Source: Euprymna scolopes (lineage: Eukaryota). From it: a DNA stretch of 64,000 nucleotides. Location of the stretch: the NCBI GenBank assembly GCA_053919585.1, contig CM132795.1; one strand, written 5' to 3'. Within the stretch, counting starts at the first letter, position 1. Every line of letters starts with the position of its first letter. The position numbers and the translations under genes are program-made. Under the pieces are notes generated by a model. That model was not told where the DNA came from and searched no databases. It was given only the letters and a program-made list of their open reading frames with translations. Shown here piece by piece: positions 23,215 through 25,695 of this stretch.

Positions 23215-24744
23215 CCCTGGTGATCAAAACATTTAGACCGCTTAAGAAACATTTTTGAAAAAAACATTTTTTTAAGGATAGATTTTAAACTCTTCTGACT
23301 TAAGGTCACTAATACTACACTCGAAATAATTATGGAAACAAAAGCCAAATATTTATTTTTAACATTTACATTTTTATTAAATCAGGTTTTTCACATTATA
23401 AAAATTATAAGACCAGAGACAAATATTCTATTAAATTGTGCAAAATGTGTATGAAAAATATATAAAAACAATTAACAATCAAACTTAATAATGAATTCTA
23501 CCTACAATGCTTTTAAAGACTTTAAAAATTATTTGAGGCATGCTAGGAATAAAGGTTTCAGTGAAGGTGCGGGGGACTATTCTTCAGTTTCTGAAGATGA
23601 CTTCAGGAAGTTCATTTTTTGTTGAATATTGTTTGCTGTTTCGATAAAACTCTTTTGTCATCCATCCCCAAACATTTTCAATTGGGGTCAAGTCCGTTCA
23701 GCATGCAGGATGTCCTAAGAGATGGCCTCCACTTTCTTGTAGAAATCTCAAGGTCCGTCCTGCAGTGTGGATTGCAGCATTATCCTGTTGGAATAACCAT
23801 CCATCCTCTACACAAACGATGACCCTCCATCATCAAAGACGCTGTCTGTAGCATACTAACATAACCAACTGCAGTCTGACGACCCTGTACCACCTGTAAG
23901 AAAATGCACCCCATACCATTACGGACGTATGTAGAAATTTTTCAAGGGGCATGTTTTTGTCACGTCAATATCGCTGGAAACCATCAGGACAATCTAAATT
24001 GAATTTTTTCTTATCAGAAAACGACTTTCTTCCACTTCTCAACGTCCCACGTTTGGTATTCACGACCAAATCTTAAGCGGTACACTTTATGACGTGGAAG
24101 CAATCAACAAATTTGTTTACGCTTTTTATTTACCATGCCTTCTTATTGTAAGTGTCGTCTGATGGGTATTGGGCTGCAATCAGCTTTTGTAACCATCTTA
24201 AATTGACTAGAAGAAAGGTCCCCTGTCATTCATAACAACCCGTCTGATTCTGTTACTCAATCCAGGAGAATTTTTTTTTTTGCGGGGGGGGGTACCAAAG
24301 GATTTTGCTCTTCCATAATTCTCAGTGTTCTTTAGAAAGTTGCAAATAACAATTTTACTGCGATTTACCTTAGCTGATATCGCTCGCTGTGACAAACCTT
24401 GGTTATGGAATCCCAGAATTTTAGAGCGCTCAACTTCGTTTAGTTTTCTTGCTTTAGGCATGGTAACATCTTTACACAGTGATTGCTGATTTCTAACTTA
24501 ACTAACCCATTAGAATTACCATAAATCTAACAATTTATACGCTTGGTCTTATAATTTCCATCATGTGTAAAAAGCCTAACTTAATAAAATGCAACTTTTT
24601 AAATAACTTTTTTGAATCTACCTTTTTGTTTCCATAACCTTTAGATTGTAGTATTAGTAACCTTAAGTCGGAAGAGTTTAAAATCTATCAAAATTGTTTC
24701 TTTTTAAAAAAAATTTAGTGGTCTTACATTTTTGATTAGCACTG
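23215..24744 (-). mobile_element. Tc1/Tc3-like DNA transposon with ~200 bp IR/DR termini; transposase pseudogene starting at 24461
   Basis: MPKARKLNEVERSKI HTH is Tc3-like; FSDKKKFNLDCPDG, FQQDNAAIH and PIENVWGW motifs are frameshifted. Long imperfect TIRs with outer/inner agacc repeats, flanked by TA. Confidence 0.92.
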
Positions 24745-24752
24745 TATATCTG

Positions 24753-24785
<33 letters not shown>

Positions 24786-24813
24786 ATATATATATATATA
24801 TATATATGGTCAC

Positions 24814-24857
24814 CCACATACAGTACTGTTTCGCTGTATCACAGCTCATCAGTGCGG
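24814..24857 (-). ncRNA. Type I hammerhead ribozyme with intact core
   Basis: Minus strand: CCGCA-CTGATGA-GCTG(tgata)CAGC-GAAAC-AGTACT-GTA-TGTGG. Confidence 0.92.
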
Positions 24858-25077
24858 CTAGACAGATCGAAACTCGACCACACGCATGACAGTCAAGGCT
24901 TAGAACAATTATGCTATTCAGCAGCTGCTGTGCAGGCAGGTACTTAACGATGTTGTAACATCGTCAGAATACCTAAGCTCAAATTGTTTACACAAAGAGC
25001 ATCGTTTAATACGCCAATGGTACATCGTTTATCACTTCTGAATATGCTCACCTCAAGATAAGGAGCATTATAGTCAT

Positions 25078-25121
25078 CCACATACAATACTGTTTCACTG
25101 TTTAACAGCTTATCAGTGCGG
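25078..25121 (-). ncRNA. Type I hammerhead ribozyme, second copy with G8->A core change
   Basis: Minus strand: CCGCA-CTGATAA-GCTG(ttaaa)CAGT-GAAAC-AGTATT-GTA-TGTGG. Confidence 0.8.
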
Positions 25122-25340
25122 CTAGAAAGGCAACTACCTCAAGCCAGGATCGAAACTCGACCGCCCGTACGACAGTCAAGACTTTAAACCATCACGGTAA
25201 CCAGCAGCTTTGGGTCAGGCTATGAATTAACGATGTCTTGACATACCTAAGCTCGATTTGTTTACACAAAGAGCATCGTTTAATACGCCAATAGTATATC
25301 GTTTATCACTTCCCAATATGCTCAACTCAAGATAAGGAGC

Positions 25341-25426
<86 letters not shown>

Positions 25427-25695
25427 AAGGCACAGGTATTCAAGAGGGAATGCAAAGGAATTGTACGAGGTTATAAAGGTTGCTACAAAAAACATTTTTT
25501 ATTGATATAGACAAGTTTATATGGTCGCGACACTGCACATGCTAATGTATCGGAAAGATAGTTAGTTAAAAACTCAAGTCGCTGTGAAGCGAGGAAAAAC
25601 GTCTGTCTTTTACAAATGAACGCGAGTTATTAAATCAAGATTTGAGAACTGTTTTTTCATCCCGTGGAAAACTTAACCTTTTTTTTTTAAATCGC

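What the first reader, a model, noticed from the sequence alone, without database searches (positions are those of the whole stretch)
24808..25343. tRNA-Asp-like Pol III head fused to a hammerhead ribozyme in a head-to-tail dimer (candidate retrozyme/circRNA unit)
Seen: two 264 bp-period units inside (TA)n. On the minus strand each has TAGCATAATTG-like A box, CTGTCATGCG (resembling the tRNA-Asp GTC loop CTGTCACGCG) and GTTTCGATC B box, then a type I HHR with a 5 bp stem I and palindromic stem III. The array has no AAAA on + (no T4 terminator on the ribozyme strand). Known: tandem type I HHR non-LTR retrozymes yield monomeric and circular RNAs, and schistosome Sm-alpha combines a tRNA-like promoter with an HHR. 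Inference: Pol III read-through, cleavage at successive HHRs and ligation would give a ~264 nt circle that Penelope RT could reinsert. The upstream copy here has G8->A, so this locus itself may be partly dead.
Basis: partly seen in the sequence, partly recalled or inferred. Interest (0 to 1): 0.88.

Follow-up and report, generated by a model that had tools for sequence, protein, structure and literature searches.

The report
Decayed tRNA-headed hammerhead retroelement dimer
This is an old two-unit copy of a short non-coding mobile element, present at more than 2,000 places in this 5.9-Gb mollusc genome, that joins a tRNA-like piece to a self-cutting hammerhead RNA motif; it is a real and tidy example of a design already known from blood flukes, not a new kind of system.

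Summary
Window 24808-25343 (minus strand) carries two head-to-tail units of 271 and 265 nt, set between (TA)n tracts. Each unit has a tRNA-like segment directly followed by a type I hammerhead ribozyme (HHR). The downstream HHR is fully canonical. The upstream one has G8A plus two further changes.

The unit belongs to a dispersed family:
- a 34-nt body motif is found at 2,273 genomic places, and the exact 44-nt HHR at 239;
- every copy examined ends at the same base, followed by (TA)n;
- 5' ends vary, and 19 of 30 insertions run past one unit length.

That geometry requires reverse transcription of a multimeric or circular RNA. An abundant Penelope-like element (PLE) in the same genome also ends in (TA)n, but shares no sequence with the family.

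The tRNA resemblance is real but weak: an ungapped 46-51 nt match to the genome's own tRNA-Asp (z 4.4), tRNA-Gln nearly as good, and no tRNA covariance-model hit. PolyA RNA-seq reads come mostly from other copies inside longer transcripts, and no read ends pile up at the cleavage sites. Pol III transcription, cleavage and circles therefore remain untested.

The architecture matches schistosome Sm-alpha and animal retrozymes, so this is a new member of a known kind. The scan has already noted this kind of element 149 times on other DNA of this genome.

The parts
25343..25424 (.). (TA)41 microsatellite on the 5' side of the array (ribozyme-strand sense); the insertion target tract
   Evidence: TRF; sequence
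25073..25343 (-). Upstream unit (271 nt): body, tRNA-like head, 19-nt spacer, damaged HHR
25147..25199 (-). tRNA-like head of the upstream unit: A-box-like TACCGTGATGG (25199-25189), CTGTCGT loop (25175-25169), B-box-like GAGTTTCGATCC (25158-25147)
   Evidence: register taken from the tRNA-Asp alignment
25078..25121 (-). Upstream type I HHR, damaged: G8A (25111), C11.1U (25097), stem III C->U (25087). The nominal cleavage site lies between 25083 and 25082
   Evidence: RNA reads from other copies show the canonical bases at these three positions (table 3)
24808..25072 (-). Downstream unit (265 nt), with a 19-nt deletion between the B box and the HHR
24865..24916 (-). tRNA-like head of the downstream unit: A-box-like TAGCATAATTG (24916-24906), anticodon-like loop CTGTCAT (24892-24886), B-box-like GAGTTTCGATC (24875-24865)
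24814..24857 (-). Downstream type I HHR, identical to the family's canonical 44-nt motif. Cleavage site GUA|U lies between 24819 and 24818. A stem I extension pairs GUC (24863-24861) with GAC (24811-24809)
24747..24807 (.). 3' tail and flank: (TA)n, then (GATA)n
   Evidence: All 30 family loci examined have (TA)n directly after ...GATGAC

Best explanation
The stretch is one old, two-unit insertion of a non-autonomous retroelement family with units of about 271 bp. Read on the minus strand, each unit consists of:
- a body of about 145 nt;
- a head of about 60-75 nt that descends from, or mimics, a tRNA gene, with A-box-like and B-box-like motifs at tRNA spacing;
- a short spacer;
- a 44-57 nt type I hammerhead whose extended stem I ends exactly at the element's 3' boundary.

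Shown:
- The family is dispersed, at more than 2,000 places.
- All copies share the same 3' end, followed by (TA)n.
- 5' ends are variable, and most full copies run on into a partial upstream unit.
- The family's majority HHR is canonical, while about 90% of individual copies have lost it.
- Copies decay evenly across body and HHR, so they are dead copies of a functional master.

Inferred mechanism:
1. A source array of at least two units is transcribed. Pol III starting from the head of an upstream unit is the Sm-alpha precedent; read-through from outside is the alternative.
2. The HHRs cut at successive GUA sites and release a unit-length RNA. Because stem III is short and palindromic, they probably act as a double hammerhead.
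3. Stem I holds the two ends of that RNA together, so a tRNA ligase can circularise it.
4. A reverse transcriptase, most likely that of the abundant (TA)n-tailed Penelope-like element, primes from a nicked (TA)n target on the UAUA that lies 10 nt after the ribozyme site.
5. It copies more than once round, giving the observed 1.1- to 2.2-unit insertions.

This particular locus can no longer release a monomer, because its upstream ribozyme carries G8A and two other changes.
For: - Anatomy and coordinates.
- Family size: at least 4,018 first-look candidates for the unit. A 34-nt body motif with up to 3 mismatches is found at 2,273 places and its reversed control at 0. The exact 44-nt HHR is found at 239 places, control 0.
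- Insertion geometry: in 30 loci every copy ends at ...GTATGTGGATGAC followed by (TA)n. 5' starts are scattered over unit positions 100-243 of a preceding unit, and 19 of 30 loci exceed one unit.
- Neutral decay: 32 aligned units have 87% mean pairwise identity. Divergence from the majority is 7.3% in the body and 7.6% in the HHR. 3 of 32 HHRs are intact, including this downstream one.
- Co-insertion as a dimer: the two units here share derived bases (GATAAACG, TTAAACGATG) against the family majority.
- tRNA relation: ungapped alignment of tRNA-Asp positions 8-59 to unit positions 148-199, with a mean score z of 4.4 and 0 of 100 shuffles reaching it. tRNA-Gln gives z 3.4; Cys and Thr give none. 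The real tRNA-Asp genes come from this genome.
- Read-through is possible: no T4 run in either unit.
- Candidate partner: GIY-YIG gives 15,396 first-look candidates, many in open frames of about 806 aa. One translated piece has RVT_1 plus a C-terminal GIY-YIG. All six PLE copies inspected (seven GIY-YIG loci were read, one not a PLE of this kind) end in (TA)n.
- Literature: in Sm-alpha the promoter is followed by the HHR and is usable only in tandems of two or more units (PMC6765202). Sm-alpha is scored as tRNA-Gln-derived (PMC2770079). PLEs have a (TA)n insertion bias (PMC8557442). Animal retrozymes and RtcB circularisation are described in PMC7229834.
Against: - The head is not recognised as a tRNA. 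There is no Rfam tRNA hit at E<=10 even in a 201-nt search of a well-kept copy, nor in this locus. ARAGORN finds nothing at default settings, and at a relaxed threshold the gain is marginal: 3 of 32 units against 11 of 320 shuffles.
- With stringent scoring, tRNA-Asp is no better than shuffles.
- The B-box-like motif has G53->T or a 1-nt insertion.
- The HHR scores below Rfam's gathering threshold.
- In most insertions (1.1-1.7 units) the single head lies downstream of the body, so it cannot drive a full-length transcript.
- No sequence similarity was found between the family and 20 GIY-YIG-containing loci.
- In three polyA RNA-seq runs, 85% of laid reads run on into unrelated sequence and fewer than 1% are 99% or more identical to this locus. 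No read starts or ends accumulate at either GUA site.
- The monomer folds only modestly better than shuffles (z -1.7).
Confidence: 0.75

Rival explanations
1. Same retroelement, but the tRNA-like head is not a working promoter. On this reading it is a decayed relic of a tRNA-derived ancestor, or an RNA-level handle, and the element is transcribed only by read-through from host Pol II transcripts or neighbouring promoters.
For: - The tRNA covariance model and ARAGORN do not recognise the head.
- In the common 1.x-unit insertions the head lies 3' of the body, so it cannot transcribe the body.
- RNA reads carrying family sequence lie mostly inside longer polyA transcripts, on both strands.
- The published description of animal retrozymes searched here mentions no Pol III promoter.
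Against: - The A-box-like motif, anticodon-like loop and B-box-like motif sit at exact tRNA spacing, and the similarity to the genome's own tRNA-Asp and tRNA-Gln exceeds all shuffles.
- There is no T4 run in the units.
- A B-box-like motif occurs within 80 nt upstream of HHR cores in 15 of 49 cases against 0 of 49 downstream. These cases are not independent: 14 belong to this family, and only one (L082) comes from a different family.
- Sm-alpha provides a precedent with the same order of parts.
Confidence: 0.3
2. It is an ordinary SINE mobilised by a LINE with a (TA)n tail. On this reading the hammerhead is a passenger motif without a role in mobility, and no circular RNA is involved.
For: - A fixed 3' end plus a microsatellite tail with 5' truncation is classical LINE-type target-primed reverse transcription.
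- 5S-rRNA-derived SINE-like copies sit in the same (TA)n tracts (L012, L018).
- There is no sequence similarity to the PLE.
Against: - 19 of 30 insertions are longer than one unit and are partial tandems. That is typical of PLE-type insertions and of multimeric or circular templates, not of LINE-driven SINEs.
- The HHR forms the exact 3' module of the element, and HHRs are a hallmark of PLE ends.
- The abundant PLE here ends in (TA)n.
- No LINE partner was looked for.
Confidence: 0.12
3. It is a local tandem duplication or small satellite that is not mobile, with chance resemblance to HHR and tRNA motifs.
For: Only the local picture: two diverged units inside a microsatellite.
Against: - There are thousands of dispersed copies on all large contigs, with identical 3' boundaries.
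- The exact 44-nt HHR occurs at 239 places against 0 for the control.
- The window holds 11 HHR cores against 0.36 expected.
Confidence: 0.02

Closest known systems
Sm-alpha / Sj-alpha SINE-like elements of Schistosoma (Ferbeyre et al. 1998; Laha et al. 2000; as summarised in PMC6765202 and PMC2770079)
   Same: Both are short non-coding units of about 270-335 bp with a tRNA-related Pol III-type promoter region immediately followed by a type I hammerhead. After cleavage the promoter ends up at the 3' end of the monomer, so only tandems of two or more units can make a full unit. Both are high-copy and dispersed, with some tandem arrays.
   Different: The host phylum differs (mollusc, not flatworm). 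No sequence relation was tested or claimed. The head here looks Asp/Gln-like but is too decayed for tRNA detectors, whereas tRNAscan calls Sm-alpha copies tRNA-Gln. This family has a strict (TA)n tail and target. Pol III transcription and cleavage have been shown for Sm-alpha, not here.
Animal non-LTR retrozymes (Cervera & de la Pena 2020, PMC7229834; Li et al. 2026 preprint 10.64898/2026.07.22.740005)
   Same: Both are small tandem units (170-400 bp), each with a type I HHR, and both are non-autonomous. Mobilisation by PLEs through unit-length circular RNA is proposed for both. The short-stem-III HHRs work best as dimers, as in the amphibian examples.
   Different: Those papers, as searched here, describe no tRNA-like or Pol III head. 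CircRNA was demonstrated there and is not demonstrated here. Most copies here are 1.x-unit insertions rather than long arrays.
Hammerhead motifs in the pseudo-LTRs of Penelope-like elements (Cervera & de la Pena 2014; Lunse et al. 2017)
   Same: Both have a type I HHR with a minimal, palindromic stem III near the element's end, partial-tandem insertion structure, and microsatellite targeting.
   Different: This element has no ORF and no detectable sequence similarity to the PLE copies sampled from this genome.
Newt satellite 2 hammerhead transcripts
   Same: Both are tandem units of about 330 bp with a type I HHR that has a weak stem III and acts as a double hammerhead.
   Different: The newt repeats are long satellite arrays reported as Pol II transcripts (PMC6765202). 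Here the copies are dispersed, (TA)n-tailed retro-insertions with a tRNA-like head.

Membership tests
Hammerhead ribozyme, type I | Conserved core CUGANGA ... GAAA with G10.1-C11.1 | tested here: met
   The downstream unit has CUGAUGA-G...C-GAAA (24852-24828). The upstream unit fails, with G8A and C11.1U.
Hammerhead ribozyme, type I | Three helices around the core with stem I open, and an NUH cleavage triplet | tested here: met
   Stem I is CCGCA/UGUGG plus GUC/GAC, stem II is 5 bp with a GAU loop, and stem III is ACAG/CUGU within a 10-nt palindrome. The cleavage triplet is GUA. The predicted lowest-energy fold forms stems I and II but not the short stem III.
Hammerhead ribozyme, type I | Reaches Rfam's curated score | tested here: not met
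   The best clan member, Hammerhead_3, scores 27.5 bits against a gathering score of 48.5 (E 0.0015 in 801 nt). In L016 it scores 23 bits.
Hammerhead ribozyme, type I | Self-cleavage at the predicted site | tested here: inconclusive
   No read ends accumulate at 24818/24819 or 25082/25083 in three polyA RNA-seq runs (table 6). However, polyA libraries lose cleaved or circular products, and most copies are mutated.
Animal non-LTR retrozyme | Head-to-tail units of 170-400 bp, each with a type I HHR, multi-copy in the genome | tested here: met
   There are two units of 271 and 265 nt. The family is found at more than 2,000 places. Other tandem pairs lie about 275-279 bp apart.
Animal non-LTR retrozyme | Unit-length linear and circular RNA in vivo | tested here: inconclusive
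   One search used polyA libraries only. The 'goes back' joints of 273-276 nt keep the unit phase on a dimer reference, so they are uninformative.
Sm-alpha-type Pol III SINE with HHR | tRNA-derived head with A and B boxes directly upstream of the HHR | tested here: inconclusive
   Against the A-box consensus TRGCNNAGTGG, the motif matches 9 of 11 positions here and 10 of 11 in the family majority. The B-box-like motif has one mismatch or insertion. The ungapped match to tRNA-Asp has z 4.4. However, there is no covariance-model or ARAGORN support, and stringent local alignment is no better than shuffles.
Sm-alpha-type Pol III SINE with HHR | No internal Pol III terminator (T4) in the unit | tested here: met
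   No TTTT on the ribozyme strand across 24808-25343.
Sm-alpha-type Pol III SINE with HHR | Transcription by RNA polymerase III | not testable with these tools
   This needs Pol III ChIP, inhibitor sensitivity or 5'-triphosphate start mapping.
tRNA gene (Rfam RF00005) | Cloverleaf recognised by the covariance model or ARAGORN | tested here: not met
   No hit at E<=10. ARAGORN reports 0 genes in the window.
Non-autonomous partner of a Penelope-like element | Shares its 3' tail or target with an autonomous PLE in the same genome | tested here: met
   All six copies inspected of the PLE with an open frame of about 806 aa end in (TA)n, as do all 30 family loci. RT plus C-terminal GIY-YIG is confirmed.
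Non-autonomous partner of a Penelope-like element | Sequence relation to the PLE's pseudo-LTR or 3' end | tested here: not met
   blastn of 32 units against 20 GIY-YIG-containing loci gave no hit at E<=0.01. Only one PLE lineage was sampled.

The most novel reading that the evidence does not exclude
The tRNA-like heads are working Pol III promoters, and several unrelated HHR families in this mollusc have each independently placed a different tRNA-derived head directly upstream of a hammerhead. 'Pol III promoter plus ribozyme' would then be a recurrent, selected design for self-transcribing retrozymes outside flatworms. These elements would produce abundant unit-length circular RNAs, which a (TA)n-targeting Penelope reverse transcriptase copies by rolling circle.
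Probability: 0.3. Interest if true: 0.5.

Novelty: new member of a known kind. Interest (0 to 1): 0.3.

Why it matters
This family extends the Sm-alpha design, in which a tRNA-type promoter region is fused to a hammerhead, from flatworms to a mollusc that is probably a cephalopod. The published searches I could run mention no hammerhead retroelements in that lineage.

The insertion geometry is clean evidence that the reverse-transcription template was longer than one unit or circular: an invariant 3' end 10 nt past the ribozyme site, a (TA)n tail, and copies longer than one unit.

For genome annotation, it explains part of the very large number of tRNA-like and hammerhead-like hits in this genome.

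It does not open a new class or settle an open question, and this particular locus is a dead copy.

Tried and rejected
1. Rfam at gathering thresholds over the whole window found only a 5S-like hit and no HHR or tRNA. In E-value mode the HHR appears only as a sub-threshold Hammerhead_3 match.
2. Rfam E-value mode on 20 family loci gave no tRNA hit in any head. The output was dominated by microsatellite 'miRNA' noise.
3. ARAGORN at default settings found nothing. Relaxing the threshold gave only marginal enrichment over shuffles.
4. Stringent local alignment (+2/-3) of real tRNAs to the units gave tRNA-Asp no better than shuffles. Only lenient scoring shows the long ungapped match.
5. blastn of the units against the GIY-YIG-containing loci found no similarity.
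6. The PLE 3' UTR contains an HHR-like string (CUUGAAGA...CGAAAC), but it is not canonical, so I do not count it as a ribozyme.
7. Read laying on polyA RNA-seq gave no ends at the cleavage sites and no informative junctions. The reads come mostly from other copies embedded in longer transcripts. This is no support, and it is not evidence against cleavage either.
8. The monomer fold gives z -1.7 and the HHR alone z -0.65, so neither is distinctive.
I did not try another route.
10. Target-site duplications could not be read, because the flanks are (TA)n or TA-rich.
11. The Rfam check of a second HHR family in the window (61340-61600) found no tRNA or HHR hit.

Full report
**What is there**

On the minus strand, window 25343-24808 holds two head-to-tail units of 271 and 265 nt. 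(TA)41 lies upstream at 25343-25424. (TA)n followed by (GATA)n lies downstream at 24747-24807.

Each unit reads: a body of about 145 nt, a tRNA-like segment, a spacer, and a type I hammerhead ribozyme (HHR). The spacer is 19 nt shorter in the downstream unit.

The downstream HHR (24857-24814) has every core element:
- stem I CCGCA/UGUGG, extended by GUC/GAC across a small internal loop;
- CUGAUGA;
- a 5-bp stem II with a GAU loop;
- GAAA;
- a stem III that is part of the perfect 10-nt palindrome ACAGUACUGU;
- a GUA triplet, with cleavage expected between 24819 and 24818.

It also has C11.1U (25097) and a stem III change (25087).

Neither unit has a T4 run on the ribozyme strand.

The motif is far above chance. 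The window holds 11 HHR-core pattern matches against 0.36 expected. The exact 44-nt ribozyme occurs at 239 genomic places against 0 for the reversed control.

Formal detectors are less generous. Rfam gives 27.5 bits to Hammerhead_3, below its 48.5-bit threshold. Neither Rfam's tRNA model nor ARAGORN reports the head.

**It is a copy of a mobile family**

The genome is 5.9 Gb in 925 contigs. The unit gives at least 4,018 first-look candidates. A 34-nt body motif is found at 2,273 places with up to 3 mismatches, against 0 for the control.

I examined 30 loci:
- Every copy ends at the same base, ...GUAUGUGGAUGAC, which is the end of the extended stem I. It is followed directly by (TA)n.
- The 5' ends are scattered. 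Nineteen loci run on upstream into a partial preceding unit that starts anywhere between unit positions 100 and 243. Two loci hold two or more units. The rest start at or near unit position 1, usually against (TA)n.

An invariant 3' end with variable 5' ends is the signature of target-primed reverse transcription. Copies longer than one unit, in which the ribozyme site is intact and internal, cannot come from an HHR-cleaved linear monomer. They need an uncleaved multimer or a religated circle as template.

The 32 aligned units are 87% identical on average. Divergence from the majority base is 7.3% in the body and 7.6% in the HHR. It is higher in the CpG-rich head (13%) and in the indel-prone spacer. 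So the copies decay neutrally.

Only 3 of 32 sampled HHRs are intact, and the downstream unit here is one of them. This agrees with the roughly 10% exact HHRs genome-wide.

The two units of this locus share derived bases against the family majority. They were therefore probably inserted together as a dimer, or were copied from one source.

**How tRNA-like is the head?**

I fetched real tRNA-Asp(GTC) genes from this genome, together with Gln, Cys, Thr and Lys genes.

- With stringent scoring, tRNA-Asp aligns no better than shuffled versions.
- With scoring suited to about 65% identity, tRNA-Asp positions 8-59 align without any gap to unit positions 148-199. The A-box region, a CUGUC(G/A)U loop carrying GUC, and the B-box region all fall in register. 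The mean score is z 4.4, and 0 of 100 shuffles reach it.
- tRNA-Gln does nearly as well (z 3.4), through its GUAAUGGUU D-loop.
- Cys and Thr show nothing.
- Relaxed ARAGORN calls tRNA-Asp(gtc) at the expected place in a handful of units, but the gain over shuffled units is marginal.

My reading is that the head is tRNA-derived or tRNA-mimicking at the level of sequence and spacing. The isotype is uncertain, and the cloverleaf is not preserved.

Against the consensus TRGCNNAGTGG, the A-box-like motif matches 9 of 11 positions in the downstream unit and 10 of 11 in the family majority. The B-box-like motif differs from GGTTCGANNCC by G53U or by a one-base insertion. Whether this binds TFIIIC is untested.

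**A likely partner**

GIY-YIG endonuclease matches are very numerous, with 15,396 first-look candidates. Many lie in open frames of about 806 aa. One translated piece carries RVT_1 followed by a C-terminal GIY-YIG, which is a canonical Penelope-like element (PLE).

All six PLE copies I inspected (seven GIY-YIG loci were read; one, L067, is not a PLE of this kind) have a 3' UTR of about 560 nt that ends in (TA)n. This is the same tail as the hammerhead family.

PLE bias for (TA)n microsatellites is documented (PMC8557442). PLEs are the proposed drivers of animal retrozymes (PMC7229834; preprint 10.64898/2026.07.22.740005).

However, blastn finds no similarity between the family and these PLE copies. 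The link therefore rests on the shared tail, the partial-tandem insertion style and the presence of an HHR. A LINE partner is not excluded. 5S-derived SINE-like copies sit in the same (TA)n tracts.

**RNA evidence**

I laid three polyA RNA-seq runs of the same species label, plus one set of contigs, on 24650-25550 at 82% or higher likeness.

- About 2,000 reads per run matched, but fewer than 1% were 99% or more identical to this locus.
- 85% ran on into unrelated sequence.
- Several loose ends had near-unanimous consensus, so most reads come from other copies embedded in longer transcripts.
- At 25111, 25097 and 25087 the reads carry the canonical ribozyme bases. This confirms that the upstream unit's changes are private to this copy.
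- Many reads cross from ...GAUGAC into (UA)n, which matches the family's 3' boundary.
- No site shows an accumulation of read starts or ends, so neither cleavage site does.
- The 'goes back' joints of 273-276 nt merely keep the unit phase on a dimer reference.

Cleavage and circles are therefore neither supported nor refuted. PolyA selection would lose such RNAs in any case.

**Mechanism**

The order 'promoter-like head, then hammerhead' means that after cleavage the head sits at the 3' end of the released monomer. Only arrays with two or more heads can make a full unit from an internal promoter. This is exactly what is described for schistosome Sm-alpha (PMC6765202), which tRNAscan classes as tRNA-Gln-derived (PMC2770079).

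My preferred model has five steps:
1. A source array of two or more units is transcribed, by Pol III from the head or by read-through.
2. The HHRs cut at successive sites. Given the palindromic stem III, they probably act as a double hammerhead.
3. Stem I brings the two ends of the monomer together, and a tRNA ligase joins them.
4. Reverse transcription is primed from a nicked (TA)n target on the UAUA that lies 10 nt past the ribozyme site.
5. Copying continues for more than one turn.

Steps 1-3 are inferred by analogy. Steps 4-5 are inferred from the insertion geometry. This locus has one damaged ribozyme and should no longer release a monomer.

**Comparison and verdict**

The element works like Sm-alpha and like animal non-LTR retrozymes. 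It meets the structural criteria of both. Expression, cleavage and Pol III dependence remain untested, and the tRNA-fold criterion is not met.

It is a new family, in a host lineage for which my literature searches found no description of hammerhead retroelements. The kind itself is known.

Earlier notes of this scan reached the same reading for sister families elsewhere in this genome (149 notes). I confirmed the main points independently for this family.

Noticed in passing
window 36478-36594 (+); also L012:1316-1434, L018:1329-1445, L005:1959-2066: These are 5S-rRNA-like sequences (44-77 bits, above Rfam's threshold) followed by unrelated sequence, so they look like 5S-derived SINEs. In L012 and L018 they begin directly after the (TA)n tail of the hammerhead element. 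They may therefore use the same (TA)n target.
   Followed up: partly
window 21462, 22728, 33893, 34231, 47804/47838, 55773, 58845, 61386 (HHR cores): The window holds 11 hammerhead-core matches against 0.36 expected, from several unrelated families. Some have a different tRNA-like or B-box-like piece just upstream (33893 and 61386 resemble a long-arm tRNA; 55773 has GATTCGAAGTTCC). Others have none. 47804/47838 is a back-to-back inverted pair.
   Followed up: partly
L074, L081, L086, L073, L080, L068 (G000 C19, C2, C3, C40, C45, C33): A very abundant Penelope-like element shows RT plus C-terminal GIY-YIG, with open frames of about 806 aa at many loci and 15,396 first-look GIY-YIG candidates. 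Copies are often in inverted pairs. The 3' UTR of about 560 nt carries poly(A) runs and a non-canonical HHR-like string, and always ends in (TA)n.
   Followed up: partly
G000:C19:127555185-127577965 and C14:19.09-19.37 Mb: tRNA-Asp(GTC) genes lie in a long tandem array with a period of about 335 bp (dozens listed; 714 pattern matches genome-wide). C11:1.68-2.16 Mb is a dense cluster of tRNA-Thr/Lys-like genes. The tRNA model gives about 506,000 first-look candidates in this genome.
   Followed up: no
L082 (-) about 967; L026 (+) about 584: Two further hammerhead families sit next to tRNA-like pieces. One has a strict B box (GGTTCGAATCC) about 25 nt upstream of CUGAUGAG. The other has TAGTGGACTGG ... 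GGTTTTGAATC.
   Followed up: no
loose ends at 24863 and 24924/25160: RNA reads reveal sister subfamilies that share this HHR but have other heads. One has a near-consensus B box (GTTCAATTCCTGG). Another reads ...TAGCGCAACTGTTAGAAGCTCCGACTGTCGTTTCGG..., and keeps the CUGUCGU loop.
   Followed up: no
window 34256-34365 region and 36843-36920: Runs of N (masked or gaps) lie next to the 338-bp hammerhead family and after the 5S-like element.
   Followed up: no
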